In this document: positions 6,325 through 63,729 of the stretch, in pieces
Layout: every line of letters starts with the position of its first letter
Position numbering within the stretch: position 1 is the first letter of the stretch
Virus record (IMG/VR): IMGVR_UViG_3300030503_000315
Span: 124,001-188,000 of that record
DNA: 64,000 nt
Direction: 5' to 3' (one strand)
Notes under the pieces: model-generated
What the model was told of the DNA's origin: nothing
Databases searched by the model: none
What the model saw: the letters and a program-made list of their open reading frames with translations, nothing else
Program-made: the position numbers and the translations under genes

Positions 6325-6660
6325 TTACTCGTCTACATACTCAGATGCTTCAACCTCGGCATGCTCAACCTCGAGATCGTCACCATCCATGTCTTCAACT
6401 TCAGGGAAGTTTACGATCAGGAAGTTTTCTATATCTTCGATAGCACCGAGATGCCGCGAAGGTACACCACAGGTCATCAAACATTGCTTCAGACCTTCTT
6501 CTCGGATCAAAGCTAGAGCATCGTACGCGTGATTCACCAGGTTCTGCCTGTGTGCAAAGTTCAGATTCTGAATAAGAGTTGCATCCGCGTAGACGTTAGC
6601 TCTAAGGACATTCATGATCTTCTCTTTATTAGACAGGGTTTCTTCACCAGTGTTGTCCAT
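6325..6660 (-). CDS. Hypothetical protein
   Basis: 111 aa, GAGGTG SD. Confidence 0.7.
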   Translation of the reverse strand: MDNTGEETLSNKEKIMNVLRANVYADATLIQNLNFAHRQNLVNHAYDALALIREEGLKQCLMTCGVPSRHLGAIEDIENFLIVNFPEVEDMDGDDLEVEHAEVEASEYVDE

Positions 6661-6670
6661 GGCTCACCTC

Positions 6671-7387
6671 TTACTCAGCAGCGGCTTCAGCAGCCTTGCG
6701 CAACTCAATCAAACGACTCTTGATGAGCTTGACCGTGCGCGGATGTGCCGGAAGATTGTCACGCAGATAACGGAGCTCCTTGCGACTCAACTTAGCCTTG
6801 CCCTGAACCAGACCAAGCGTGTTGGTGTCCGGTTGTTGTTTAAGGCGCTGGAAGAACGCTTCGAAGTTTGCACTTAGGCCACCTACTCCTGTCGTCACAC
6901 CTGCCTTGACCTGAGCGGTGACATTATCGTTATGCACCGAAACAGACGGAGCATTGCCTTCGCGGCCAGACAGCTCACGAGAGTTGACCACGTCAACATT
7001 TGCATCACTGATTTTACGAACCGAACCGGCTTCGCGGATTTGCTGTGACAGGTTTTGCATGCGCAGTTGTTCCTCACGGGCACCCGGCGACTTCAGAATC
7101 TTGGAAGCCGTAGGTTCGTCAATGAGAGTGACCAACTCTTCAACCACTGCGTTACGAAACTCTGTTGACTCAAGCAAACGCTTCTTTGTAAAACGTCCGG
7201 TAGCATTGTAGGGGAGCCATGACTGCGGAACGCGCATGAGCTCTGCACGACCTTGTGCAGTGGGAATGTTGATGAGAAGTTCACCTTCCATCTGCAGCTT
7301 CGAATCTGCCGCAGAGTTAAGAAGCCATATCGACTTCTTGTCTTCGTTTGCTTCCAGTTCATCCAGGGAAATTGCGATTATACTCAC
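6671..7387 (-). CDS. Hypothetical protein
   Basis: 238 aa, GTG start with AGGAG SD. Confidence 0.75.
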   Translation of the reverse strand: MSIIAISLDELEANEDKKSIWLLNSAADSKLQMEGELLINIPTAQGRAELMRVPQSWLPYNATGRFTKKRLLESTEFRNAVVEELVTLIDEPTASKILKSPGAREEQLRMQNLSQQIREAGSVRKISDANVDVVNSRELSGREGNAPSVSVHNDNVTAQVKAGVTTGVGGLSANFEAFFQRLKQQPDTNTLGLVQGKAKLSRKELRYLRDNLPAHPRTVKLIKSRLIELRKAAEAAAE

Positions 7388-26850: not shown

Positions 26851-28791
26851 ATGTCGAGTATTCTTAATTCTTTCGCATCGGACTTCGACCAATCGCTGAA
26901 CGAAAAGTACAGCGTCCTGGAATATCTGGAAAACTGCCGTACGGACAAATCGTTCTACGCAACGGCAGCGGAACGGATGTTGAAAGCAATCGGTGAACCG
27001 CGCATGCTGGATACGTCGAAAGATGCGCGTCTCGGTCGTATCTTTGACAACCGGACAATCAAGGTGTACCCGGCGTTCGAAGAAGAGTTCTTCGGTATCG
27101 AGGACACAATTGAACGTCTAGTTGGTTTCTTCCGCGCAGCAGCACAGGGTCTGGAAGAACGCAAACAGGTTCTGTACATGCTTGGACCGGTAGGCTCTGC
27201 AAAGTCGAGTCTGGCAGAGAAGTTGAAGTACCTGATGGAACTCAACCCCATCTACGTGCTGAGCTACAAAAATCAGTTGTCCCCGGTGTTCGAATCTCCG
27301 CTCGGCCTCTTCCCGGTTCACAAGTATGGTGAACGTCTGGAAAAGGAATACGGAATTCATCGTCGTTACCTGACGAACCTGATCCCTTCGCCATGGGCTC
27401 TGAAACGTCTGAAGGAAACTAATGGTGATCTGTCTGATTTCAGCGTGGTCAAGATGTACCCGTCCAAGCTGAACCAGCAGGCAATCATGAAGGTCGAACC
27501 GGGGGATGAAAACAATCAGGACATCTCATCCTTGGTTGGTAAGATCAACCTTCGTCGTATCGATGCGCACGACCAGAACGACAGCGATGCATATCTGTAC
27601 TCGGGTGGCCTCTGCCGCTCCAATCAGGGCATGCTCGAATTCGTGGAAATGTTCAAGGCACCTATCAAGGTTCTTCACCCGTTGCTGACGGCGACGCAGG
27701 AAGGTAACTACGTTGGTACCGAAGCGCTTCCTCCTATTCCGTTCAGTGGTGTAGTAGTTGCGCACTCGAACGAAAGCGAATGGGAAACGTTCAAGAACAA
27801 CAAGAACAACGAGGCTTTCCTGGATCGTGTGTCCCTTGTGTCTGTACCGTATTGCAAACGCGTTGATGAAGAAATCAACATCTACAAGAAGATGCTTGGT
27901 GCTTCGTCATTGGCACAGTCGCCGATTGCACCGCAGACCTTGAAGTACCTGGCGCAATGGTCGATCTCTACACGGCTGAAGGAGCCGGAGAATTCCCTGC
28001 TGTTTTCTAAAGTCCGAGTCTACAACGGTGAGAACCTCAAGGACATCGATCCGCGAGCAAAGTCGACGCGTGAGTATCGCGATCACGCAGGTGTAGCTGA
28101 GGGAATGACAGGGATGTCTACCCGCTTCGCATTCAAGATCCTGTCGAAGACATTCAACAACGATGCGGAAGAAGTTGCAGCTGATCCGCTTCAGCTGATG
28201 GTTGTCCTGCAGAATGAGATCAAGCGCGAGCAGATGTCGAAGGAACAGGAAGAGAAGTACGAGTCGTTCGTCAAGGAAATGTCGCAACGTTACCTTGAGG
28301 ATCTGACGAAGGACATCCAGAAGGCATTCATCGAGAATAGCGAAGACTATTGCCAGAACCTGTTCGAACGTTATATCCAGTTGGCAGATGCCTGGTGCCA
28401 GGATTCGACGTTCAAGGACGATAACACCGGTTCGACAATGAACAAGGCAGAGATGGATCAGGAGCTGTCGAAGATCGAAAAGCCGGCGGGTATCGCGAAC
28501 CCGAAGGATTTCCGCCCTGAAGTCGTGCAGTTCGTACTGCGCGTTCAAGCTCGTAATGGTGGCAAGATGCCGCGCTGGAATTCGTATGAAAAGATGAAGC
28601 AGGTCATCGAAAGCAAGATGAGCGCTTCTCTGGACGAACTCCTCCCGGTGATCTCGTTCGAAACGAAGAAGGAAGTGAAGCTGCAGAAGGATCACGACTC
28701 GTTCGTGGAGCGTATGGAGAAGATCGGCTACACCTCACGTCAAGTTCGTCGTGTAGTCGAATGGTTCAGCCGCGCACGCAAGGCTAACTAA
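26851..28791 (+). CDS. prkA: PrkA/YeaG family AAA+ serine protein kinase
   Basis: GLEERKQVLYMLGPVGSAKSSL Walker A; EPGDENNQDISSLVGK; ANPKDFR. Confidence 0.95.
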   Translation: MSSILNSFASDFDQSLNEKYSVLEYLENCRTDKSFYATAAERMLKAIGEPRMLDTSKDARLGRIFDNRTIKVYPAFEEEFFGIEDTIERLVGFFRAAAQGLEERKQVLYMLGPVGSAKSSLAEKLKYLMELNPIYVLSYKNQLSPVFESPLGLFPVHKYGERLEKEYGIHRRYLTNLIPSPWALKRLKETNGDLSDFSVVKMYPSKLNQQAIMKVEPGDENNQDISSLVGKINLRRIDAHDQNDSDAYLYSGGLCRSNQGMLEFVEMFKAPIKVLHPLLTATQEGNYVGTEALPPIPFSGVVVAHSNESEWETFKNNKNNEAFLDRVSLVSVPYCKRVDEEINIYKKMLGASSLAQSPIAPQTLKYLAQWSISTRLKEPENSLLFSKVRVYNGENLKDIDPRAKSTREYRDHAGVAEGMTGMSTRFAFKILSKTFNNDAEEVAADPLQLMVVLQNEIKREQMSKEQEEKYESFVKEMSQRYLEDLTKDIQKAFIENSEDYCQNLFERYIQLADAWCQDSTFKDDNTGSTMNKAEMDQELSKIEKPAGIANPKDFRPEVVQFVLRVQARNGGKMPRWNSYEKMKQVIESKMSASLDELLPVISFETKKEVKLQKDHDSFVERMEKIGYTSRQVRRVVEWFSRARKAN

Positions 28792-28864
28792 GATTGTAGT
28801 TGCACCGGGTAGTTCCCCTGTAGTACCGTGTGAAGTGTAGTACGTAGTCTTGTAAGTTGTGAAG

Positions 28865-28900
28865 GGGGCAGCCTGTTTAAGTTAGGCTGCCCTTTTCCTT
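28865..28900 (+). terminator. Intrinsic terminator
   Basis: GGGCAGCCT/AGGCTGCCC stem followed by T tract. Confidence 0.8.
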
Positions 28901-28928
28901 TTTGTTTTCGAATTTCATAGGTACCACC

Positions 28929-29489
28929 ATGGAAACAATTGATAAGATTTTCAATTGGATGAATCAAGACGGGGCAAGATTCGGAGTAGGAATGTGGATC
29001 ATAGGTGTAGCGTTTGGTCTCTTCCTGTCCTTGATTATCAAGTGGGTCAATCCATGAGTGTTCTTCGCAAAGAAATCTCTCGTCTGAACCATGTTATTGA
29101 GCGCACCGAGCAAGAGATGATTAATCTAGAGGAAGATTTCTGGCAGAATGGTGGCATCTGTTGTCCGGGTTGTGGTGTACCTGGATTCTCAGAGATGGAA
29201 GAGAAGCAAGAGCGTAGGAAAAAGCAACTTAGATATCTTATCAAGAAGTACGAGAAGGACAGTGGGAGGAAATATGAAGATCATCCGGAAGCTCGTAGCC
29301 TGGCCAGCCGCATATTCAATTTTCTTCTTGGGCTTGATCCTGACTAGGTTGGGTTGGTACAAAGGTCAGTGGCATTGGTTTATGGACTTAGCGATGCATA
29401 TCAGGATTGGGGTGGTTGCCCGGGTCCATGGCTTCGCACAGAAGATGTTCATAATGCACGAAAGAACAGGTGATGTAGTAAATATTTGA
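28929..29489 (+). other. Three small genes inserted between prkA and yeaH
   Basis: 28929-29057 (42 aa membrane peptide), 29054-29347 (CCPGC motif), ~29272-29489. Confidence 0.55.
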
Positions 29490-29539
29490 TGGGCGGTATA
29501 AAACCGGGTGACGGGTAGATCGTCACCTCAACTGGAGGG

Positions 29540-30817
29540 TTGAAAATGTTTAGTCGGACTATTGTTGATGCACGACCACAATCGCAGTCTAAGACCTCGG
29601 CAGACCGGCAGAGGTTTGTTCGTCGGGCTAAATCTCAGATTCGTGAAGCAGTTAAGAAGGCAATCTCTACTGGCGATATCAAGTCATTGGAGAAGGGTCG
29701 CATTCGTGTTCCAGTCAAGGACATGAATGAACCCACGTTTGAGAACGACAGGGAATCCGGGTCCCGTGATCGCGTCTACACCGGGAACAAAGAATGGATT
29801 CCAGGTGACACGATTGCACGTCCTGAGGAAGGTGGAGGTAATGGTACTCAAGGATCGGATGATCCAAGCATTGGCAATGATGACTTCGCCTTCATTCTGA
29901 CTCCAGAGGAATTCTACGATATCTTGTTCGAGGATTTGGGTCTTCCTGATCTAATGAAGAAGACGATGAAGGATATCACGAAGGTCACTCGCAAACGCGC
30001 GGGCTTCGTTATCACGGGTAATCCTTCGCAGCTGGATATTCGCCAGACTTACAAGTTCGCATTCGCACGTCACAAGGCATTGGGTCGTCCTTCGAATGTA
30101 GACATCGAAGAAGCTGAAGAGGATCTCAAGGAAGCACAGGAGTGTGGAACACAATTCGATGCAGAACTAGTTGAAGATGCATTGAAGGAAATGAAAATCG
30201 CACAGAAACGTATCCCGCTCATTGATACAATTGATCTGCGATATCGCAACTATCCACCGCGTCCTGAGCCGATCACCAAGGCAGTGATGATTTGCTGTAT
30301 GGATGTTTCTGGGTCGATGGATGAGGATCGAAAGGATCTGGCAAAACGATTCTATCTCTTGCTATATGTCTGGTTGATGAAGCAGTACAATCAAAGGGTT
30401 GATATCGTGTTCATCCGTCATCACACGCGTGCGGAAGAAGTAGACGAACAAAAATTCTTCTACGATCAAGAATCAGGTGGTACAGTCGTAAGTCCAATCT
30501 TTGAACTCGCAGCTAAGATCATCAAAGATCGTTACAATCCTTCTGATTGGAACATCTACATGTGTCATGCATCTGACGGTGACAACTGGACAGATGACAA
30601 CAAGAAGGTTGTCGAGGCATTGGATGGTATGGCGTCTACCTTGCAATACTTTGCATATCTTCAGGTTACGGAAGAAGACGAGGACGAAGGAGATACGTTG
30701 TGGAACGCCTATCAAAAGGTGAGTGAACGACACAACCATATTCGTATGGTGTCCGCGGATGAACCTTCGGAAATCTGGCCGGTGTTTAAAGAGTTGTTCA
30801 CCAAGGATATGGCGTAA
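29540..30817 (+). CDS. yeaH: YeaH/YhbH (DUF444) vWA-like protein
   Basis: RQRFVRR, MDVSGSM, FIRHHT, ESGGT.VS, SDGDNW. Confidence 0.93.
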   Translation: MKMFSRTIVDARPQSQSKTSADRQRFVRRAKSQIREAVKKAISTGDIKSLEKGRIRVPVKDMNEPTFENDRESGSRDRVYTGNKEWIPGDTIARPEEGGGNGTQGSDDPSIGNDDFAFILTPEEFYDILFEDLGLPDLMKKTMKDITKVTRKRAGFVITGNPSQLDIRQTYKFAFARHKALGRPSNVDIEEAEEDLKEAQECGTQFDAELVEDALKEMKIAQKRIPLIDTIDLRYRNYPPRPEPITKAVMICCMDVSGSMDEDRKDLAKRFYLLLYVWLMKQYNQRVDIVFIRHHTRAEEVDEQKFFYDQESGGTVVSPIFELAAKIIKDRYNPSDWNIYMCHASDGDNWTDDNKKVVEALDGMASTLQYFAYLQVTEEDEDEGDTLWNAYQKVSERHNHIRMVSADEPSEIWPVFKELFTKDMA

Positions 30818-30823
30818 GGAGAA

Positions 30824-32347
30824 TTGGAAATGAAATCCGCTATCAAGACAATCAAGCCCGATTACCTGTTCACCACTTCTGAGTGGACATTCGAGATGCT
30901 TGAGAACACCCTTCGTCTTTGTGAAGACATTGGCAAGGAAGAGCTCGGCCTCAAGCTCATGCGTAATCAGGTTGAGATCATCACCAGCGATCAAATGCTT
31001 GAAGCCTACACTTCGGTAGGAATGCCGATTCACTATCATCACTGGTCGAACGGCAAGTCGTATCTTCAGCAAAAGCAAGCGTACAAGGGCGGTAACATGG
31101 GTCTGGCTTATGAGATCGTTATCAATAGCGATCCATGCATCGCCTACTGCATGGAAGAGAACAGCTCTGCTATGCAAACTCTCGTATTGGCCCATGCTTC
31201 GGTTGGACACAACTCAGTTTTCAACATGAATTATCTGTTCAAGCACTGGACGGATGCAACGGCTATTGTCGATTACCTGATCTTTGCGCGCAACTACATT
31301 CGTCAGTGTGAAGAGCGTTATGGTCTGGATGAAGTCGAAGAGATTCTCGACTCAGCTCATGCACTTCGCTACATGTCGTTCGATCGCCGCAAACGTCAGT
31401 CGACTTTGACGGAAGACCAGGAACAAAAGCGTCGCATGGATTTGTTGGAAGCGCTGGAGCGTGAGCGTTCACAGTATGATGATCTCATCCCAGTGGATGA
31501 ACGGGAGGATGAAGCTAAGGACAAGGATCGTGGTGATCTCAAAGAGCCGGAAGAGAACCTCCTGTATTTCCTTGAGAAGAACTCTCCTAATCTGAAGGCG
31601 TGGCAGCGTGAAATCCTTCGGATTGTACGGACAATCCAGCAGTACTTCTACCCGCAGATGCAGACGCAGGTGGTGAATGAAGGATGGGCGACATTCACTC
31701 ACTACTACATTCTCAATCGTCTGTATGAGATGGGAAAGATTACGGAAGGTGCGTTGCTTGAATGCATGACTTCGCATTCGCAGGTCCTTTTTCAACAGCC
31801 AATGAGTCCCAACCTGAATCCGTATGCACTTGGATTTTCTATCTACAAGGATATCAAACGGATGTGCGAGGAACCCACAGATGAAGATCGTGAGTGGTTC
31901 CCTAATCTGGTTGGTAAAGATTGGAAGGAAGAATGCCTGTTCGCCATGATGAACTTCAAGGACGAGTCGTTCATTCTTCAGTACCTTAGCCCAAAGGTTA
32001 TGCGTGACTTCCGCATGTTTGCCTTGACGGATGATGCAGACGAGGATCACTATCTGGTGAATAAGATTCACAACGATCCTGGGTATAAAGAGATTCGTTC
32101 GATGTTGAGTCAGCAGTATCGTATGGAAAACCGCATGCCGAACATGATGGTTGTCCGTGCAGACATGAAAGGCAATCGTCTTCTAACCGTACAGAACAAG
32201 ACGCAGAATAAGATTCTTCTTAAAGACGATCCCGCGAAAGATTCTGTGCAACATCTGGCGTATCTGTGGGGATACGACGTTAGAGTGGAAACCGTGGATG
32301 AGAGTGGTAAGGTCCTGCAATACTACACAGCTGAGGTGGAGAACTAA
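30824..32347 (+). CDS. ycgB: SpoVR/YcgB family protein
   Basis: GMPIHYHHWS.GK, LAYEIVINSDPCIAY, TQVVNEGWATF.HY, NPYALGF. Confidence 0.93.
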   Translation: MEMKSAIKTIKPDYLFTTSEWTFEMLENTLRLCEDIGKEELGLKLMRNQVEIITSDQMLEAYTSVGMPIHYHHWSNGKSYLQQKQAYKGGNMGLAYEIVINSDPCIAYCMEENSSAMQTLVLAHASVGHNSVFNMNYLFKHWTDATAIVDYLIFARNYIRQCEERYGLDEVEEILDSAHALRYMSFDRRKRQSTLTEDQEQKRRMDLLEALERERSQYDDLIPVDEREDEAKDKDRGDLKEPEENLLYFLEKNSPNLKAWQREILRIVRTIQQYFYPQMQTQVVNEGWATFTHYYILNRLYEMGKITEGALLECMTSHSQVLFQQPMSPNLNPYALGFSIYKDIKRMCEEPTDEDREWFPNLVGKDWKEECLFAMMNFKDESFILQYLSPKVMRDFRMFALTDDADEDHYLVNKIHNDPGYKEIRSMLSQQYRMENRMPNMMVVRADMKGNRLLTVQNKTQNKILLKDDPAKDSVQHLAYLWGYDVRVETVDESGKVLQYYTAEVEN

Positions 32348-40161: not shown

Positions 40162-40575
40162 ATGAGCCTTAGCCTTCATTCTCAAACAATCAACATGAAG
40201 CGAACCGAGTTGATCCGTATTCTTGAGACCAACCTGGAGAAACACGTAGAAGAGTATAAGGAGGCGGTCATCAATTACCGTAAGGCATTGATGGTTGACC
40301 TGACGGAAGCTCTTCGCCAGGCTCAAGATGAGTCGTTCAATCTTAAAAAGATAAAGGTGGATTTTGTTCACCCGCAGTCACATGAATCGGATTACACTCG
40401 TGTTCTGAAGATGATGCGCCTTTCGATTGACGACACTATCGAAATAGATAATCAAGCATACGACGCATACATCGAAGATGAATGGCAATGGAAGTCGCAA
40501 TTCCGTCTGATGAACTCAACCTACGCAACTAAGGCTGCAGTGTTTGAGTCAAGCGTAGGTGGAATGATTGAGTAA
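40162..40575 (+). CDS. Conserved helical phage hypothetical protein
   Basis: N..KH..EY.EA...Y...P.SH..DY.R...M.......I.......Y..D.W.W pattern. Confidence 0.75.
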   Translation: MSLSLHSQTINMKRTELIRILETNLEKHVEEYKEAVINYRKALMVDLTEALRQAQDESFNLKKIKVDFVHPQSHESDYTRVLKMMRLSIDDTIEIDNQAYDAYIEDEWQWKSQFRLMNSTYATKAAVFESSVGGMIE

Positions 40576-40631
40576 GTAGCAAAAACATAATTATCATTTG
40601 TGACCCTTCGTTATACCTAATAGGAAAAATC

Positions 40632-41429
40632 ATGGCAAAGCTACATGAAGTGCTGGCATCGGAAAAGACAGTTACAGCCGCACGCGATCATCTGCATGAA
40701 GACACTCAGACAAAGTTTAAGAAAGCCGATCAATACTTTACAGGTATGATTAAATCCCTTAAGATGATCGAAGACTCTCCGGAAGCGGAGGCTATTGAAC
40801 AGGCAGCGAAGCAAGAGAAGGAACTCCCGACTACTCTAGTCACCACGATGGATTATTACCTTAGCTTCTGGGCTAAGGCAGAGAACCTCCTGTTTCAAAA
40901 GAACGTGACGAACACCCAAGCAGTGACCAGTCTATTATTCCGAGGCTCACTGGTTGCTGATAATGTTCCGGTTGATGAGTTGATGGGACTAGAAGTACGC
41001 ATTGGTGAATTGCGCAAACTAATTTTGGAAATGCCAACACTTGATGCTTCTAAGAATTGGGAGTTGGATTTGACTGCGCCGCAGGCTGGCACATGGAAAG
41101 CAACAAGCAATCAGGTAACGACCAAGACGGAGAAGGATGAAGTGACCGCAATTATTGTACCGGCAAATGATAAACATCCGGCACAGGTAAAGACGACCAT
41201 CAAAGACAAGGTAGTTGGTAAGTTCACATTGCAGACTTCGTCAGGCGCGACCACTGCAATTCAGAAGGCAAACATGATTGCTGCGATGGACGATTTCCTT
41301 ATCGAAGTCAAGACGGCTCGTACCCGGGCTAACTCTGTTGAGGTTGTTCCAGTTGACCCCATTGGGAATATCATCAAGGACATCCTCATGGCGTCACTGC
41401 TAGACGCACCCTCGAACAATCAGGTGTGA
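40632..41429 (+). CDS. Conserved hypothetical protein (recalled as DUF7873-like) directly upstream of large RNA
   Basis: MAKL..V.A.EK, VPV..L..LE, P.LD....W, A.DKHPAQV, SGA, VK.AR..AN..EV motifs. Confidence 0.7.
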   Translation: MAKLHEVLASEKTVTAARDHLHEDTQTKFKKADQYFTGMIKSLKMIEDSPEAEAIEQAAKQEKELPTTLVTTMDYYLSFWAKAENLLFQKNVTNTQAVTSLLFRGSLVADNVPVDELMGLEVRIGELRKLILEMPTLDASKNWELDLTAPQAGTWKATSNQVTTKTEKDEVTAIIVPANDKHPAQVKTTIKDKVVGKFTLQTSSGATTAIQKANMIAAMDDFLIEVKTARTRANSVEVVPVDPIGNIIKDILMASLLDAPSNNQV

Positions 41430-41430
41430 C

Positions 41431-41547
41431 ATGAACTGGCCGATGGCTTTTGCAATTGTTGGAGTAGTAGCTGCAGTGATGTTTGGCTCAGCAGCAAACG
41501 ATTATGTGGATAGCCCAAAGATAGCATGTACGCCGAATAGTAAATAA
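41431..41547 (+). CDS. Small membrane peptide
   Basis: 38 aa MNWPMAFAIVGVVAAVMFG... Confidence 0.5.
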   Translation: MNWPMAFAIVGVVAAVMFGSAANDYVDSPKIACTPNSK

Positions 41548-41625
41548 GTGTTGAAGGATTGTTGAAGGATTGTTGTAGCAAAACATACAGGAACAGGAAG
41601 CGTTATCATCCTCGTTAGCATCCTC

Positions 41626-41853
41626 GCCTTACGTTGGTTCGAATCCAGCCAGGCGCGCCAAGAGTTCTGCTGTATGTATACTTCATAAGATTGACATTAT
41701 CTGATTGAAGGAGAGGGCCGACGACTTCCGACAGCTCGCCCCTCATAATCCAGAAAACCTATTATGTTTCATAGCGAGTATGGAGTATGGTAGAATTCTT
41801 GACGCGCCTGTGACCCGAGAGGATAGGGCCCAGATTTCTAATCTGGTGTAGGC
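41626..41853 (+). tRNA. Circularly permuted tRNA-Arg(TCT)-like module: 3' part 41626-41660, 5' part 41804-41853
   Basis: T-arm + CAGGCGC-G-CCA upstream; GCGCCTG + D-arm + CCAGA-TTTCTAA-TCTGG downstream; acceptor strands perfectly complementary. Confidence 0.8.
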
Positions 41854-41955
41854 AATTATCGTTCTTGTATTACCTGTATGAGTTATCATAAGCAACTGCA
41901 GTATGAATCCCGTCGAGTTGCTGGCACACCCTACTGAATAGAGTGCCTAGCTAAA

Positions 41956-42519
41956 AATCAGAAGTCACGGGTTCGAATCCCGTCTCCGCCTCACTGTGTA
42001 TTATGGTATGACAAGAAAAGAGAAACGAAACTTTATCCGAGCCAATATCCAGAAAATTGGTGAATGCTGGATCTGGCAATTGAAGACGGATAGAGATGGT
42101 TACGGTTGGTATTCCTACAAAGGAAAATTGCGCCGGGCTCATAGATCCTCGTTTCACGCTTTCAAGGGAAAGATTCCAAAAGGTCTTTCTGTCTGTCATA
42201 CCTGCGACAATCCAAGCTGTGTGAGACCAAAACATCTGTTTGCGGGTACTCACAAACAAAACATGGAAGACATGGCAAAGAAGGGAAGATCTAATAAAGG
42301 CCGCCATGTTAATACCGGAGAGGCTCACGGTTATTCCGTTCTGACTGAAGAACTAGTTCTGTACATAAGAAAGGTATGTGCGGGAGGTAAATCACAGAAC
42401 TCTGTTGAAAGAGAACTTGGTTTATCCTCTGGACTTGTTAACAAGGTGGTCAGAAGAAAGCTTTGGACGCACATTTAGTATACAGTGAGGCGGAGTATCT
42501 CAGTGGTAGAGGTCTGATT
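41956..42519 (+). tRNA. Circularly permuted Cys-like tRNA module split at the anticodon loop: 3' half 41956-41993, 5' half 42489-42519
   Basis: AA-TCAGA-AGTC-ACGGG-TTCGAAT-CCCGT-CTCCGCC-T upstream; GGCGGAG-TA-TCTC-AGTGGTA-GAGG-TCTGA-TT downstream. Confidence 0.75.
42008..42478 (+). CDS. HNH homing endonuclease
   Basis: CWIW...GYG...AHR....F...IP.GL.VCHTCDNP.CVRP.HL..GT...N..D; C-terminal HTH-like segment. Confidence 0.93.
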   Translation: MTRKEKRNFIRANIQKIGECWIWQLKTDRDGYGWYSYKGKLRRAHRSSFHAFKGKIPKGLSVCHTCDNPSCVRPKHLFAGTHKQNMEDMAKKGRSNKGRHVNTGEAHGYSVLTEELVLYIRKVCAGGKSQNSVERELGLSSGLVNKVVRRKLWTHI

Positions 42520-42664
42520 CTATTCCTTATCGTAACTAACTCGAATGTGGTGGAAAGTGTGGTTGGGATTAATATCCAAAGTTCCAGGCAGGAGTCGGAT
42601 AAGACAAATGTTCTGGAACTTCCTAAAGAGTTTTCCACGAGAGCTCTTTAGAAAGACAAACAAG

Positions 42665-42695
42665 AAGGCTACCAATTTCGGTTGGTAGCCTTTTT
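42665..42695 (+). terminator. Intrinsic terminator
   Basis: AAGGCTACCAA/TTGGTAGCCTT stem plus T tract. Confidence 0.85.
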
Positions 42696-48277: not shown

Positions 48278-50602
48278 ATGCTCGAGAGTCAGTTTTCCTT
48301 TAATCCTTCCTACATTTCAGATGATAAGAATCCCTATAATCTGAAGCTCAAGAGGGACGTCAATTGGTCAACATCTAATCGGCGTCTTCTTGTCATCTTC
48401 CAAACCATTGATGGACGAGACCTAAAGTCAGGGGAATTACTGACGGGCGATGTAGGAAAAACATTCCAACGCGTCTATAAGTATGCAAGAAAGATAGCCA
48501 ACAACTACCTAGACAATCAGACGCCTTTGTATTCTGTAGCTGTAGCGAATTTCGGCGCGTATCGTCATCTACACCTTAAGGGTAGCAGGCGTTCGGACGC
48601 AGAAGCGCAATTCGCCGAGCGTGTCCATGATCTCATAAAGAAGATCAAGCCAACGCACATCCTGGTCGCTGGCGACAACGCAATGATCGCACTATACCCT
48701 AAGATAAAGGATCCTCAATATAAGAAGGGTTGGGTCCACAAGATCAAGGTAGATGATGAAGTAGTGAAAGTAGTCTCTACCGTAGACTACTCCCGTCTTC
48801 TCGAGAAGCATGGAGTTTATGCAAATCTTCTTGGACTGTTTAGCCGCCATCTAGCGTTCTTGATGATGGGCCGCAATCCACATAATCTTTCGCAGATCAA
48901 GTTGGATGCGAGGTACATCAAAACGATTGCAGAGTTCGATCAGTTGATGCACAAGTTCGATACGGCGACTGAGGTTGCAATCGATACGGAGACTCGCAAT
49001 CTCTCTGTGCTACACAACAAGATCTATACGATTCAGTTTGCAACAAATCACAACAAGGAAGTCGGATATGTCCTTGTTCTCGATCACCCTCAGGCGCATT
49101 GGGATTCGAAAGAACGAAAGTATATCAAGTCGGAGTTGAGGAAACGATTCGGAGCGAAGACGGGACCAACTCTAATCACCTTCAATGGTTTCATGTTTGA
49201 CCTGCACGTTATCCGGGTGGCTTTGAAGCTTCCCATCATCTGGCTAAAGGTGTGGGAGATCATGTTCGCAGAGCATTTGTTGGATGAGAACGTATCCTTG
49301 CAGAACGATATCTCATCTACTGTGGATCAACGTTCAGGTAAGATGTCAAAGTATGGGGGCTTGAACCCCATCTTCTGCTCATATGGCAACTCGCATTATC
49401 TTGATGCAGTCTTTGGTAAGGAAGAGCGGGGATCTATCGGCGCTATCGATCCCTCGCGCAAGGATGCAGTAGAGTATATGGCAATGGATACGGTGTCTAT
49501 CCTTAACATGCGGGATCAGGAAATTGCCAGAGCAGAGCATATGGATATCGAAGGGAAGAACTACAAGCCTTTCTTTATTCGACATATGAAGCATCAGATG
49601 TCAGATGCAGCGCATGCGATGTCACAAATGCGTCAGGATGGATCCTTCATAGATATCAAATATCTGAGCTATCTGTTGTCGAAGCAATCTCCATTGCGTC
49701 AGGAACTAAAACGCGTTGAGAAGCAGATGTTTGAGTGGAAAGAAGTGCAGCAAGCCAATAAAGAACTTCTAGGAACAACGGGGTTCAAGGCAGGGTCACT
49801 ATTCTCCAGAGCTATTGGGACGGCAACGAATTGGATCTTCAAGCTGAGTAAGCCAGACCATAAGAAGAAGTTGTTTATAGATATCATGGAACTTGAACCC
49901 GTCAACAAGACGGCGACAGGTGAAGATGCAATTGACAAAGACTTCATCGCCCACTACAAGGACACGAACAAAATTGTCGCTCTGTACGGGGATCACCAGG
50001 GTTTATCAAAACTTATCTCGACCTATGTTAAGGGATGGCGTAGGATACTAACAAACAATGTCGATGCTATCACTGATCTCTGTTTACGTGCAGCGTATTT
50101 CATAGTTGATACAGGTCGACTGGGATCCAATAAGCCGAACCTTCAACAGATTCCATCGCGTGGAAAGTCAGCCAAGTCTATAAAACGTTCATTCGTAGCT
50201 GAGCCCGGTCGCATTCCAATCCAGTTCGACTATTCAGCACACGAAGTGCGAATGTGGTCTGTTGCATCAAACGATTTGAATCTTGCAGCGGTGTTCAAGA
50301 TAGGCCAGAAGCTAAGGAAGATGTATGTTAAAAATCCTACAGACGAACTCAAGGCGCGTATCAAAACGGAAGGAGACGTACACATTCTTAACGTTAAACG
50401 AATCTTCGGTAAGATCGTTGACAAGGCGCACCCGCTCCGATACGCGATCAAGGCGGTTATCTTTGGCCTTATCTACGGAAAAAGTGCGAAGTCGCTAGGT
50501 GAAGATACAAAGCAGGCAGAGATCGAAGAAGTTAGAGAGAAGCTCTCGGAACTATACAACGAGAAGCTAGATCTTCAGGCAGCTCTAAAGAAGGCAGCAT
50601 GA
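48278..50602 (+). CDS. polA: Family A DNA polymerase, N-terminal part (UDG-like domain, 3'-5' exonuclease, motifs A and B)
   Basis: AIDTET, FN..FD, Y.A.D exo motifs; TGRLGS..PNLQQIP; DYSAHEVR; RYAIKAVIFGLIYG. Confidence 0.9.
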   Translation: MLESQFSFNPSYISDDKNPYNLKLKRDVNWSTSNRRLLVIFQTIDGRDLKSGELLTGDVGKTFQRVYKYARKIANNYLDNQTPLYSVAVANFGAYRHLHLKGSRRSDAEAQFAERVHDLIKKIKPTHILVAGDNAMIALYPKIKDPQYKKGWVHKIKVDDEVVKVVSTVDYSRLLEKHGVYANLLGLFSRHLAFLMMGRNPHNLSQIKLDARYIKTIAEFDQLMHKFDTATEVAIDTETRNLSVLHNKIYTIQFATNHNKEVGYVLVLDHPQAHWDSKERKYIKSELRKRFGAKTGPTLITFNGFMFDLHVIRVALKLPIIWLKVWEIMFAEHLLDENVSLQNDISSTVDQRSGKMSKYGGLNPIFCSYGNSHYLDAVFGKEERGSIGAIDPSRKDAVEYMAMDTVSILNMRDQEIARAEHMDIEGKNYKPFFIRHMKHQMSDAAHAMSQMRQDGSFIDIKYLSYLLSKQSPLRQELKRVEKQMFEWKEVQQANKELLGTTGFKAGSLFSRAIGTATNWIFKLSKPDHKKKLFIDIMELEPVNKTATGEDAIDKDFIAHYKDTNKIVALYGDHQGLSKLISTYVKGWRRILTNNVDAITDLCLRAAYFIVDTGRLGSNKPNLQQIPSRGKSAKSIKRSFVAEPGRIPIQFDYSAHEVRMWSVASNDLNLAAVFKIGQKLRKMYVKNPTDELKARIKTEGDVHILNVKRIFGKIVDKAHPLRYAIKAVIFGLIYGKSAKSLGEDTKQAEIEEVREKLSELYNEKLDLQAALKKAA

Positions 50603-50603
50603 T

Positions 50604-51521
50604 ATGGCTGAAGTAAAAGAACGCGAATTACCGAAAACGAGAATAGACATAAAGAAGAGGATCGCACATATCGATGCAGAGATGCATAAACTGGACTCAA
50701 GGCTGAACGTATTGTATGGAGAGAACAGATCTGACTATGCTCAAGGCATAATGGACAAAATCTTCAAAGAGTTTGGCAAGGGAAAAAGTTGGCTGGATAG
50801 GATGCGTTCGAATGTAGCTGAGCATCTTCATTCCTACTCACCGAATGGTCGCGTTCGACATCTCTATGGTTATCTCTATACAGACAGAGAGTGTCAAGGT
50901 ACGCAGGAACGTCGAGGCATCAATGCACCTATTCAGGGTTTTGCATCTGAGGTAGGCGTTAAGGCTGACAGGTTGATTGTCGAGTCTTACTATCGTGAGC
51001 TTCCAAAGTTGAAGAAGATGTTGGGTATCGTAGAATCTACGTGGGCCAAGTTTCGATTGAAATGTAGTCGCGCAGTTCACGATGCACTGTACAAACAAAT
51101 CCCGTATGAATTTGTTATCCCATTCATCCACATTCTTCAGTATCAGGCAACGTACGGTGTCGCTCGAGCGTACGAGAAAGCGTTTGGAATTAGATTTACA
51201 GTGGAACCTGAAATAGAAATAGGTATTGGTGCATCTTCTGACAATGAATCAGATTGGGATTGGTCGATGTCAGATCTTGTTCGCATCATTGTCAAGACAG
51301 TAGAGGATATCGACAAGGTTGGTCAGTTGGTAGGTACTAAGAAGGAAGTGTTGGATAAGATCTTCGAGCCTTGGAGGAACAAGGAAGTACGGGACTACCT
51401 TCAAGCAAAATACCCAATTCTGGGAGTCAAGGATCTGGACGATCAGATTGAGATTGCGCTCAAGGTTCTGAAAAAGATGCAAATTGAAATGAAGAAGAAA
51501 GATGCAACCGATTCCAATTGA
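50604..51521 (+). CDS. polA: Family A DNA polymerase, C-terminal part (motif C)
   Basis: GRVRHL, ERRGINAPIQGFAS, VHDA. Confidence 0.9.
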   Translation: MAEVKERELPKTRIDIKKRIAHIDAEMHKLDSRLNVLYGENRSDYAQGIMDKIFKEFGKGKSWLDRMRSNVAEHLHSYSPNGRVRHLYGYLYTDRECQGTQERRGINAPIQGFASEVGVKADRLIVESYYRELPKLKKMLGIVESTWAKFRLKCSRAVHDALYKQIPYEFVIPFIHILQYQATYGVARAYEKAFGIRFTVEPEIEIGIGASSDNESDWDWSMSDLVRIIVKTVEDIDKVGQLVGTKKEVLDKIFEPWRNKEVRDYLQAKYPILGVKDLDDQIEIALKVLKKMQIEMKKKDATDSN

Positions 51522-62862: not shown

Positions 62863-63729
62863 ATGACTATCAATGTAGAGCAAGAGTATCTGAAGGTCGA
62901 AGGGCGTTATGAAGACCAGTATGGCCACTACTTGAAGTTCTTCCAACGGTTGGCTGAAGCTAATTTCAAAGAGCATCTGGCGTTCTGTCCTGCTTCATGG
63001 AAGCCGTTCGCAGAGTACATGGGTCACATGGTTACATCGGTCATTCATCACTTTGATTCCTGCAAAGTAATCGAAGCAATGTATCCGCACTATCATGAGT
63101 TCCCTGACCAACGTCATTTCATCGAAGTAGTATCTACGTTCCGGCCAGAGCTAGTTGATGCTCTGTGGAAATTTGACATGCAATGGGAAGTTCCCGATCA
63201 CATTCTTCTGGAACAACCGAGAGTACCGGCAGGTGAGGAAATCATTATCTCGAACAATGGTTCGTATCACCGCCGAGAGATTCTTGAGTACTTCCCCAAG
63301 CTTGATGACTACGTCCCACAGAAGGATAAGGTAGTACTGGTACCGTGCGCCGCAGATAAGCCTTATCCGGCTCCGCTGCACAAGGCAGTTCTCGAACGCA
63401 TGCCTTCGGATTTTTATCTAGCCAATATTACCGGAGTGATCGGTGTAGTTCCACAAGATCTGTGGTCAGAGATGCCCATGTATGATTCGGGCATCCCGAA
63501 TGAATGGCGTCTGGTGAATGTAGCTACAGAGTATTTCAAGAAGCACCGTCATACGAAGATCATTGTGTACCTTGACTTCTATTCGATTCCACTTAAGACA
63601 GCGTTCGAAAAGGCGGGTGTCGATCTTGATATGGTGACTTGGGTTAACCCTGTAGAATTTTATGCAGACTACCTGGACCTCCTCGATCCGTATCGCCTCC
63701 ACCAACTAGAGCAAGCATTCAAGAACTGA
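62863..63729 (+). CDS. DUF5591 (ArcS-associated) domain protein
   Basis: VLVPCAADKPY...H, G.VP.D.....P.YD. Confidence 0.7.
   Translation: MTINVEQEYLKVEGRYEDQYGHYLKFFQRLAEANFKEHLAFCPASWKPFAEYMGHMVTSVIHHFDSCKVIEAMYPHYHEFPDQRHFIEVVSTFRPELVDALWKFDMQWEVPDHILLEQPRVPAGEEIIISNNGSYHRREILEYFPKLDDYVPQKDKVVLVPCAADKPYPAPLHKAVLERMPSDFYLANITGVIGVVPQDLWSEMPMYDSGIPNEWRLVNVATEYFKKHRHTKIIVYLDFYSIPLKTAFEKAGVDLDMVTWVNPVEFYADYLDLLDPYRLHQLEQAFKN

What the first reader, a model, noticed from the sequence alone, without database searches (positions are those of the whole stretch)
40162..42695. Candidate new system: giant multi-piece RNA built from inside-out tRNAs, next to two conserved proteins
Seen: a ~1.1 kb unit bounded by an AGTAAATA promoter (41539) and a terminator (42665-42695) contains two tRNAs in 3'-half-then-5'-half order, joined by further helices. 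These are CATACAGG 41584/CCTGTATG 41873; a three-way junction at 41881-41952 (AGTTA/TAGCT, AGCAACT/AGTTGCT, GGCAC/GTGCC); AAGTTCCAG 42579/CTGGAACTT 42613; a hairpin at 42623-42651; and a possible pseudoknot GTGGAAA 42550/TTTCCAC 42632. Each tRNA is attached to the scaffold through its variable arm or anticodon arm, while its acceptor stem closes a cargo loop. Inference: RNase P and 3' processing would excise the two cargo loops and leave a three-piece RNA with two tRNA-like acceptor ends. Piece A is ~41549-41660 ending CCA, piece B is 41804-41993 (starts as Arg 5' half, ends as Cys-like 3' half) and piece C is 42489-end. The conserved genes directly upstream (40162-40575 and 40632-41429, the latter recalled as DUF7873-like) are candidate protein partners. 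Established comparators are two-piece permuted tmRNAs, permuted tRNAs of algae and Thermofilum, and tRNA-associated GOLLD/ROOL RNAs; I cannot match this architecture to any of them.
Basis: partly seen in the sequence, partly recalled or inferred. Interest (0 to 1): 0.95.

Follow-up and report, generated by a model that had tools for sequence, protein, structure and literature searches.

The report
Phage RNA with two inside-out tRNAs
A giant phage carries a large folded non-coding RNA built around two tRNA-shaped domains written "3' half first"; about a hundred related phages have the same RNA, always next to one gene, no RNA database lists it, and its function is unknown.

Summary
Window 41539-42695 holds one member of a conserved family of structured RNAs, about 350-450 nt in compact form, found in phiRSL1-like jumbo phages. 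The RNA has two helical domains. Each presents a tRNA-like module: a T arm, a 7-bp acceptor stem closed by a hairpin, and a D arm. Long-range helices P1-P4 link the modules and covary strongly. The RNA lies beside the DUF7873 gene in essentially every locus with enough flanking sequence, about 100 in all. It is usually downstream and is upstream in one clade. No Rfam family reaches threshold. The nearest matches are YrlA (a bacterial Y RNA that mimics tRNA) and the acceptor/intervening hairpin of betaproteobacterial two-piece tmRNA. Three features make excision of the loops by tRNA-processing enzymes likely but unproven: N73-CCA is often kept after the acceptor stem, short-loop variants look like tRNA spacers, and the loops repeatedly hold homing-endonuclease genes (HNH here; GIY-YIG elsewhere). 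Only synteny links DUF7873 to the RNA, and function is unknown. I rate it a new variant of tRNA-mimic RNA, of high interest.

The parts
41539..41546 (+). AGTAAATA promoter-like motif in front of the RNA
   Evidence: 16 copies in the window against 1.4 expected, with strand following gene direction. The same motif lies 5-10 nt before P1 in L003, L050 and L051.
41584..41591 (+). P1, 5' strand (CATACAGG). It pairs with 41873-41880.
   Evidence: Covaries: L003 TAGAGG/CCTCTA, L024 TGTGGT/ACCACA, L025 TGTAGTGAG/TTCACTACA, L008 GTTTGGC/GCCAAAC.
41592..41625 (+). J1, single-stranded junction with the conserved AGCGUUAUC... repeat motif
   Evidence: Conserved sequence block in the anchored alignment. 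ATCGT is about 7-fold enriched in the junctions.
41626..41632 (+). P2 (variable-arm helix), 3'-side strand. It pairs with 41848-41853.
   Evidence: Covaries: L003 GAACTC/GAGTTC, L008 GGGGC/GCCCC, L024 CGTCTGAA/TTCAGACG.
41633..41660 (+). Module 1, 3' half: T arm, acceptor 3' strand, G73, CCA
   Evidence: Sequence. RNAalifold on 22 relatives gives 25 of 26 pairs compensatory.
41661..41803 (+). Loop 1: non-coding extension of the acceptor hairpin
   Evidence: Homologous 109-153-nt inserts in L050, L052, L006 and L007. The loop is 6-49 nt in most relatives.
41804..41846 (+). Module 1, 5' half: acceptor 5' strand, D arm, anticodon arm with a UUUCUAA loop (UCU, Arg-like)
   Evidence: Sequence. The loop is identical in L051 and L052 and carries one extra base in L050, and the stems show compensatory changes. 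In other clades this arm ends in a GNRA or UUCG tetraloop or is absent.
41847..41880 (+). P2 5'-side strand, J2 (UUAUCGUU...GUAUUA) and P1 3' strand (CCTGTATG)
41881..41892 (+). J3 junction with a further UUAUCAU copy
41893..41900 (+). P3, 5' strand (CAACTGCA). It pairs with 42558-42565 and closes domain 2.
   Evidence: MFE of the trimmed window RNA. Covaries: L003 CAATCTAA/TTAGATTG, L009 GTAAAGTTTA/TAAACTTTAT, L024, L047 GCACCGGT/ACCGGTGC.
41914..41919 (+). P4, 5' strand (CGAGTT). It pairs with 42538-42543.
   Evidence: Covaries: L003 CACCCT/AGGGTG, L004 CAAGC/GCTTG, L009 TCAAGGTC/GACCTTGG.
41923..41947 (+). Px hairpin (GGCAC/GTGCC)
   Evidence: Stems covary in L050, L051, L052, L003, L004 and L006.
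41957..41993 (+). Module 2, 3' half: anticodon-stem analogue strand, variable loop, T arm, acceptor 3' strand, U73 (no CCA)
41994..42488 (+). Loop 2, carrying an HNH homing-endonuclease ORF (41996-42478)
   Evidence: Pfam HNH_3 E=5.9e-12. The protein is 63% identical to the ORF in the same loop of L004, and L050 and L051 lack it. L063 has a GIY-YIG/NUMOD3 ORF in this loop.
42489..42518 (+). Module 2, 5' half: acceptor 5' strand, D arm, anticodon-stem analogue strand
42527..42536 (+). J4, conserved UUAUCGUAAC
   Evidence: Identical in L003, L004, L006, L050 and L051.
42538..42565 (+). P4 3' strand (42538-42543) and P3 3' strand (42558-42565)
42566..42577 (+). Py small hairpin
   Evidence: It is capped by GNRA in many relatives.
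42579..42621 (+). Terminal hairpin with a conserved loop (YNGGNUAYRA-like)
   Evidence: Stems covary and a U-rich tract follows in many loci.
42623..42695 (+). Extra hairpin (42623-42651) and intrinsic terminator (42662-42695)
40632..41429 (+). DUF7873 gene, always adjacent to the RNA
   Evidence: Pfam E=1.6e-53. For the adjacency.

Best explanation
This is a trans-acting, phage-encoded tRNA-mimic RNA of a family not yet described.

Shown:
- It is transcribed as its own unit, from the AGTAAATA motif to the terminal hairpin and terminator.
- It folds into two domains. Domain 1 is helix P1, a large internal loop with UUAUC(G/A)U repeats, and helix P2, which opens into tRNA-like module 1 at the variable-arm position.
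- Domain 2 is closed by long-range helices P3 and P4. It holds hairpin Px and tRNA-like module 2, attached through its anticodon stem.
- Both modules keep canonical T and D loops, so an L-shaped elbow is expected, and a 7-bp acceptor stem.

Inferred:
- The hairpins that close the acceptor stems act as intervening sequences. RNase P cuts at the 5' strand, and 3' trimming or CCA addition leaves N73-CCA.
- The mature RNA would then be three base-paired pieces with two tRNA-like acceptor ends: about 41549-41660, 41804-41993 and 42489 to the end.
- This would explain why the loops can hold a 145-nt extension or a whole homing-endonuclease gene.

Speculative: the processed RNA works as a scaffold or decoy that engages proteins recognising the tRNA elbow and acceptor end. 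The neighbouring DUF7873 protein, or whatever binds the UUAUC repeats, may be part of it.
For: Structure:
- Covariation of module 2, module 1, P1 and P2 and P3 and P4.
- MFE z-scores of -7.7 and -7.0 for the compact homologues.

Family:
- A module is present in all 44 viral or MAG loci with downstream sequence.
- Full-length R1 matches of at least 50 bits occur in 58 of 67 independent metagenome loci.
- The RNA is upstream of DUF7873 in L115-L117, with all the hallmarks.

Own transcription unit: promoter motif and terminator.

Processing inference:
- CCA at 74-76 in 31 of 68 modules and CC in 46 of 68, where about 1 and 4 are expected by chance. N73 is always a purine in module 1.
- Loops of 9-15 nt read NCCA plus a short AU-rich spacer, ending in U in 6 of 8.
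- The hairpin resembles the intervening sequence of betaproteobacterial two-piece tmRNA genes: 39.8 bits for L008 and 24.9 bits for L003. Transcripts of those genes are cleaved by tRNA-processing enzymes (PMC11915505).
- M. smegmatis YrlA, which has a 7-bp acceptor stem, is cut by RNase P and gains CCA in vivo (PMC4201824).
- Loop 2 holds HNH genes in two distant phages and a GIY-YIG gene in a third.
Against: - There are no transcript, end-mapping or aminoacylation data.
- About half of the modules lack an encoded CCA, including module 2 of this window (UCAC).
- In the hairpin-type loops CCA is paired with UGG, which is a poor context for RNase P.
- A closed-hairpin, YrlA-like form, as in Salmonella, is not excluded.
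- DUF7873 proteins are acidic (median pI 5.7) and have no recognisable RNA-binding fold. All loci come from one phage lineage, so synteny is weak evidence of partnership.
- No target of the mimicry is identified.
Confidence: 0.6

Rival explanations
1. It is a Y RNA of the YrlA type. The RNA stays largely intact, binds a Ro60/Rsr ring protein from the phage or host, and tethers it to a nuclease for RNA quality control or repair.
For: Module 2 with its flanks matches Rfam YrlA end to end in L003 (32 bits, E=4e-5) and partly in L008 (29 bits). YrlA has the same V arm, T arm, closed acceptor stem and D arm order. Some group 2 jumbo phages encode TROVE proteins (PMC7824862).
Against: Scores are under half of the gathering score of 69. 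The GNCGAAN0-1G Ro-binding motif is not conserved. No TROVE hit was found among the window ORFs tested, including all ORFs of 137 aa or more within 4 kb, or in the precomputed Pfam of L050-L052. The extra domain, the junction repeats and the DUF7873 linkage are foreign to YrlA.
Confidence: 0.12
2. It is a cis-acting element of a neighbouring mRNA, either the DUF7873 3' UTR or the leader of the next gene. The tRNA-like folds would serve as processing or stability signals.
For: The RNA always abuts DUF7873. In phiRSL1 the annotated ORF269 starts inside the terminal hairpin, after a GGAGGAG. In L115 the RNA ends about 30 nt before the DUF7873 start codon.
Against: It has its own promoter motif and terminator. 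The RNA lies on either side of DUF7873, and 600-900 nt can separate them. The downstream genes differ between loci. About 400 nt of covarying structure is far more than a processing signal needs.
Confidence: 0.1
3. They are true circularly permuted tRNA genes. In this window's clade, module 1 is matured into a decoding tRNA-Arg(UCU).
For: In the window, L051 and L052 module 1 keeps a canonical 7-nt UUUCUAA loop despite compensatory changes in the stems. The window encodes no ordinary tRNA-Arg(UCU), while several relatives do.
Against: In most clades the anticodon arm of module 1 ends in a tetraloop or is missing, and module 2 never has an anticodon loop. The outer ends of the halves continue into conserved helices, not into a bulge-helix-bulge junction. 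L050 has an 8-nt loop. Position 14 of the window module is G, not A.
Confidence: 0.05
4. It is a tag-less derivative of a permuted tmRNA. It would compete with host tmRNA and block trans-translation, as reported for the phage DS6A tmRNA-like RNA.
For: Local matches to beta_tmRNA positions 86-150, covering the T arm, acceptor stem and intervening hairpin. Relatives encode a true permuted tmRNA (L024). The DS6A precedent is cited in PMC11915505.
Against: G3:U70 is absent from all 68 modules. Full D stems are present. ARAGORN finds no tag frame or tmRNA. Scores are far below gathering.
Confidence: 0.04
5. It is non-functional debris from rearranged tRNA genes around a homing endonuclease.
For: The unit lies in a tRNA-rich region and contains a mobile HNH gene.
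Against: It is conserved with compensatory changes across about 100 loci whose neighbouring protein has diverged to 30-73% identity.
Confidence: 0.01

Closest known systems
YrlA, a bacterial and phage Y RNA that mimics tRNA (Rfam RF02553)
   Same: The tRNA-like domain is written in the same permuted order. The acceptor stem is closed by a loop and the anticodon stem is replaced by the helix that carries the RNA ends. The T and D loops are canonical. In M. smegmatis the 7-bp acceptor version is cut by RNase P and gains CCA.
   Different: There is no Ro60 gene nearby and no GNCGAA motif, and scores are below threshold. Here there are one or two modules inside a 350-450-nt RNA with extra helices, UUAUC-repeat junctions, GNRA-capped hairpins and a linkage to DUF7873.
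Two-piece (permuted) tmRNA of Betaproteobacteria (RF01850, RF04321)
   Same: The order is T arm, acceptor 3' strand, (N)CCA, intervening hairpin, acceptor 5' strand. The intervening hairpin is similar in sequence (CCAAAG..CAUUC..GAGUG..CUUUGG). The intervening sequence can carry cargo. The mature form is held together by base pairing.
   Different: There is no tag reading frame, no pseudoknots and no G3:U70. A complete D arm is present, and there are two modules.
Circularly permuted tRNA genes (Cyanidioschyzon, Thermofilum)
   Same: The 3' half lies upstream of the 5' half, with an intervening sequence at the acceptor ends that is removed by RNase P and 3' processing.
   Different: Those genes yield a contiguous decoding tRNA through a circular intermediate made at a bulge-helix-bulge motif. 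Here the outer ends run into a conserved scaffold and most modules cannot decode.
Large phage-associated ncRNAs found near tRNA genes (GOLLD, ROOL)
   Same: They are large, highly structured, phage-borne and lie in tRNA-rich regions, and their function is unknown.
   Different: There is no sequence or structure match in Rfam. Those RNAs do not contain tRNA-shaped domains, as far as I know.

Membership tests
YrlA / Y RNA (RF02553) | Reaches the Rfam gathering score (69 bits) | tested here: not met
   32 bits in L003 and 29.3 bits in L008. Nothing in the window.
YrlA / Y RNA (RF02553) | tRNA-like domain with T arm, loop-closed acceptor stem and D arm in permuted order | tested here: met
YrlA / Y RNA (RF02553) | GNCGAAN0-1G motif near the 5' end (presumed Ro60 contact; PMC4201824) | tested here: not met
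   The corresponding strand varies in sequence. A single match in L006 (GTCGAAAG) is part of the stem and variable loop.
YrlA / Y RNA (RF02553) | Ro60/TROVE gene within about 4 kb on the same strand | tested here: not met
   No TROVE hit in window ORFs around the RNA or in L050-L052. All annotated phiRSL1 ORFs within 3 kb are under 270 aa. The rest of the genomes was not searched.
Permuted two-piece tmRNA (RF01850/RF04321) | Permuted tRNA-like domain with an intervening sequence after the CCA position | tested here: met
Permuted two-piece tmRNA (RF01850/RF04321) | Gathering score; tag reading frame with resume codon | tested here: not met
   At most 39.8 bits against 84. ARAGORN reports no tmRNA in the window.
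Permuted two-piece tmRNA (RF01850/RF04321) | G3:U70 alanine identity pair | tested here: not met
   0 of 68 modules.
Circularly permuted tRNA genes | 3' half upstream of the cognate 5' half, with complementary acceptor strands | tested here: met
Circularly permuted tRNA genes | Halves rejoin into a complete decoding tRNA (anticodon loop present; junction in a loop with a processing motif) | tested here: not met
   Module 2 has no anticodon loop. Module 1 has one only in the window's clade. The outer ends form conserved helices P1-P4.
Group I intron in a tRNA gene (permuted intron-exon idea) | Group I core detectable; exons give a canonical anticodon loop | tested here: not met
   No intron family with E up to 10. 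The joined loop would be UCUAAAA, with C at position 33.
GOLLD / ROOL | Match to the Rfam model | tested here: not met
   No hit at E up to 10 in the window unit or L003, or up to 1 in L008.
New family (twin tRNA-like RNA next to DUF7873) | Processing at the acceptor loops; CCA ends; aminoacylation | not testable with these tools
   Only indirect sequence signals are available.

The most novel reading that the evidence does not exclude
It is a new class of large phage RNA that host tRNA-maturation enzymes cut into three base-paired pieces, exposing two genuine CCA acceptor ends on one particle. At least one end is aminoacylated: module 1 is Leu-like with A73 in most clades and Arg-like with a retained UCU loop in this one. 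Together with DUF7873, or whatever binds the UUAUC repeats, the particle manipulates translation factors or disarms tRNA-directed host defence.
Probability: 0.15. Interest if true: 0.9.

Novelty: new variant of a known kind. Interest (0 to 1): 0.8.

Why it matters
Large, intricately folded non-coding RNAs are rare, and each new class has tended to reveal new biochemistry. This one is well defined: about 100 loci, strong covariation, and clear domain boundaries. It occurs in an isolated and sequenced phage, phiRSL1, so it can be studied at the bench. It combines two tRNA-shaped domains with features otherwise seen only in Y RNAs and two-piece tmRNA. It offers a direct test of whether phages use processed, multi-piece tRNA mimics, and of what such mimics target. 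It also shows that the acceptor-closing loop of a permuted tRNA-like gene is a safe landing site for homing-endonuclease genes, much like an intron. For annotation, it explains a 0.4-1.1-kb "empty" gap in phiRSL1-like genomes.

Tried and rejected
- **Permuted group I intron-exon idea** (self-splicing that would circularise the tRNA halves around the HNH gene). Rejected. No intron family matches. Most relatives have 25-37-nt loops and no ORF. The joined anticodon loop would be non-canonical.
Not conserved. P3 and P4 replace them.
- **MFE pairing ATACAGGAAC/GTTCTTGTAT in the window**.
- **DUF7873 function.** No sequence hit in PDB. The AlphaFold model (pLDDT 82) has no fold match in PDB or BFVD. 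No paper mentions the family.
- **Sigma-70-like promoter inside loop 1** (41768-41796), which would start transcription at 41804. By eye it is not conserved in L050 or L006, so I treat it as chance.
- **Small ORF 42545-42688 in the tail.** By eye the frame is not conserved in L050 or L051.
- **Ro60 in phiRSL1.** I could not test this. The supplements of PMC4201824 and PMC7824862 are not held.
- **Literature searches** for permuted tRNAs in phages or tRNA-like RNAs in jumbo phages found no description of this element.
- **Model R1 also hits junctions between ordinary tandem tRNA genes**, mostly below 35 bits with two at 45-46 bits. Only matches of at least 50 bits were counted.


Full report
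**What is in the window.**
The window comes from a 215-kb IMG/VR contig. The only isolated relative found in the phage collection is Ralstonia jumbo phage phiRSL1.
- Upstream of the unit lie four ordinary tRNA genes, a 137-aa ORF (PHROG 34511, unknown function) and a 265-aa DUF7873 protein (Pfam E=1.6e-53).
- From 41539 to 42695 there is no conserved protein gene except one ORF at 41996-42478, which is an HNH_3 homing endonuclease.
- Read directly, the sequence contains two tRNA-like genes in 3'-half-then-5'-half order, with the coordinates given under "parts".
- ARAGORN and the Rfam tRNA model do not call them. Only a partial 20.9-bit tRNA hit covers the T arm of module 2.

**The element is conserved.**
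- I aligned 40 DUF7873 homologues and fetched 41 viral loci, 6 loci from Burkholderiales metagenome-assembled genomes, 3 closest relatives and 80 metagenome loci.
- I wrote a scan for a T arm plus an acceptor 3' strand, followed downstream by its complement and a D arm. It found one or two such modules next to DUF7873 in every one of the 44 viral or MAG loci with downstream sequence.
- Covariance model R1 was built from 35 module-2 sequences. It then found full-length matches of at least 50 bits in 58 of 67 independent metagenome loci.
- Most of the loci without such a match are copies of the window itself (split by the HNH gene), truncated contigs, or loci with an insertion in the module, such as L063.
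- In L115-L117 the RNA, with all its hallmarks, lies immediately upstream of the single DUF7873 gene instead of downstream. The adjacency therefore survives a rearrangement.

**Structure.**
- Module 2: in 35 distinct sequences the acceptor and T stems are 100% paired. 19 of 20 pairs change on both sides. The covariation score is 0.86, against 0.25 in shuffles (0/500) and at most 0.26 for slid partners.
- Module 1: RNAalifold gives the T arm, an acceptor stem that continues into a hairpin, and the D stem. 25 of 26 pairs are compensatory.
- Caveat: the training sequences were chosen with a scan that demanded acceptor complementarity. The independent recovery, and the fixed distance of both strands from the conserved T and D loops, answer that.
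- An anchored alignment and per-locus folding show four further helices.
  - P2 is the variable-arm helix of module 1.
  - P3 (41893-41900 with 42558-42565) and P4 (41914-41919 with 42538-42543) close domain 2 around hairpin Px and module 2.
  - All four have different but complementary sequences in different clades.
- After P3 come a small hairpin, often capped by GNRA, and a terminal hairpin with a conserved loop and a U-rich tail.
- The compact homologues fold far better than shuffles, with z-scores of -7.7 and -7.0.
Only its GGCAC/GTGCC hairpin is kept. The proposed pseudoknot has no counterpart in L050.

**Variation that is informative.**
- Module 1 is tRNA-Leu-like (class II D arm, A73) in most clades, and there its "anticodon" arm ends in GNRA or UUCG or is missing.
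- In the window's clade module 1 is tRNA-Arg(UCU)-like. The UUUCUAA loop is conserved in the window, L051 and L052 despite compensatory stem changes. L050 has one extra base.
- One sub-clade has no module 1 at all. A plain hairpin replaces it, but P1, the junction motifs, module 2 (there tRNA-Glu-like) and the 3' hairpins remain.
- The four single-stranded junctions carry UUAUC(G/A)U-type repeats. ATCGT occurs at 9.2 per kb in junctions against 1.3 per kb in the flanks. I have no explanation for these repeats.

**The acceptor loops.**
- Loop lengths run from 6 to 153 nt for module 1 and from 9 to 39 nt for module 2, plus three cases with genes.
- Those three are HNH ORFs in the window and L004, and a GIY-YIG/NUMOD3 ORF in L063. 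The two HNH proteins are 63% identical, and the closer relatives L050 and L051 lack the gene. Loop 2 is thus a recurrent landing site for mobile endonuclease genes. In the window and L004 the base of the hairpin is preserved around the insert.
- The window's 143-nt loop 1 is a non-coding extension shared with L050, L052, L006 and L007.
- Right after the 7-bp stem, CCA follows N73 in 31 of 68 distinct modules and CC in 46 of 68. N73 of module 1 is always a purine.
- Where loops are short they read NCCA plus 5-10 AU-rich bases, ending in U in 6 of 8 cases. That looks like a spacer between tandem tRNA genes.
- Where loops are hairpins they resemble the intervening sequence of betaproteobacterial two-piece tmRNA genes: 39.8 bits locally for L008 and 24.9 bits for L003.
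- M. smegmatis YrlA, the one YrlA with a 7-bp acceptor stem, is cut by RNase P and gains CCA in vivo (PMC4201824).

**Comparison with known families.**
- No Rfam family reaches its gathering score in the window or in 13 relatives. The only hits there are ordinary tRNAs and a true permuted tmRNA in L024.
- Module 2 with its flanks aligns end to end to YrlA at 32 bits. YrlA is the closest described design.
- The defining YrlA features fail, however: the score is below threshold, there is no GNCGAA motif, and there is no Ro60/TROVE gene within 4 kb.
- tmRNA membership fails on the tag frame, G3:U70 and the D arm.
- Classical permuted tRNA genes fail because most modules cannot decode and their outer ends are part of a scaffold.
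- Literature searches found no description of this RNA or of DUF7873.

**Protein partners.**
- DUF7873 is the only constant neighbour. Its AlphaFold model (pLDDT 82) matches nothing in PDB or BFVD. The proteins are acidic, with a median pI of 5.7.
- The 137-aa protein is detectable only in the three closest relatives.
- Partnership is therefore a hypothesis based on synteny.

**Verdict.**
This is a real, strongly supported and apparently undescribed family of large phage RNAs built from one or two acceptor-capped tRNA mimics. I rate it a new variant of the tRNA-mimic kind (YrlA, permuted tmRNA domain) rather than categorically new. Processing into pieces is likely but untested, and the function is open.

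Noticed in passing
window 26851-32347: Three consecutive genes for PrkA kinase (AAA_PrkA plus PrkA), DUF444 and SpoVR. This resembles the bacterial yeaG-yeaH-ycgB stress and sporulation cluster, here carried by a phage.
   Followed up: no
window 48278-51521: A family A DNA polymerase is split over two adjacent ORFs. The first (774 aa) ends at profile position 232 and the second (305 aa) starts at 233.
   Followed up: no
window, 16 sites (e.g. 18142, 26521, 35548, 41539, 45057): AGTAAATA occurs 16 times against 1.4 expected. It is on the minus strand up to 15.8 kb and on the plus strand afterwards, matching gene direction. It is probably a phage promoter element.
   Followed up: partly
L003 (phiRSL1) 6566-6689; also L009:8994-9118, L019:8129-8243, L011:2220-2344, L008:10362-10462, L026:9512-9608: These are ordinary-order tRNA matches about 100-125 nt long. 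In phiRSL1 the anticodon loop is replaced by 62 nt (41 bits). They could be further non-decoding tRNA mimics or tRNAs with short insertions.
   Followed up: partly
L024 2591-2800: A phage-encoded permuted (two-piece) tmRNA gene, RF04321 at 73 bits, lies about 3 kb upstream of the DUF7873 gene.
   Followed up: no
window 41431-41538: A 36-aa hydrophobic ORF lies between DUF7873 and the RNA promoter motif. L052 has a 44-aa ORF at the same place.
   Followed up: no
window 41551-41572: A tandem duplication, GTTGAAGGATT twice, lies between the promoter motif and P1. It is absent from L003, L050 and L051, where P1 starts 5-10 nt after the motif.
   Followed up: no
L063 2426-3190: A GIY-YIG/NUMOD3 (SegE-like) endonuclease ORF sits inside the acceptor loop of module 2. 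This is a second family of homing endonuclease using the same site as the HNH gene of the window.
   Followed up: yes
L115-L117 (e.g. L115 1130-1500): Here the RNA, in its single-module form, lies directly upstream of DUF7873 instead of downstream.
   Followed up: partly
window 62863-63729: A 288-aa ORF carries a DUF5591 domain. From memory, that domain is known from archaeosine tRNA-guanine transglycosylase-like proteins, so this may be part of a DNA or RNA base-modification system.
   Followed up: no
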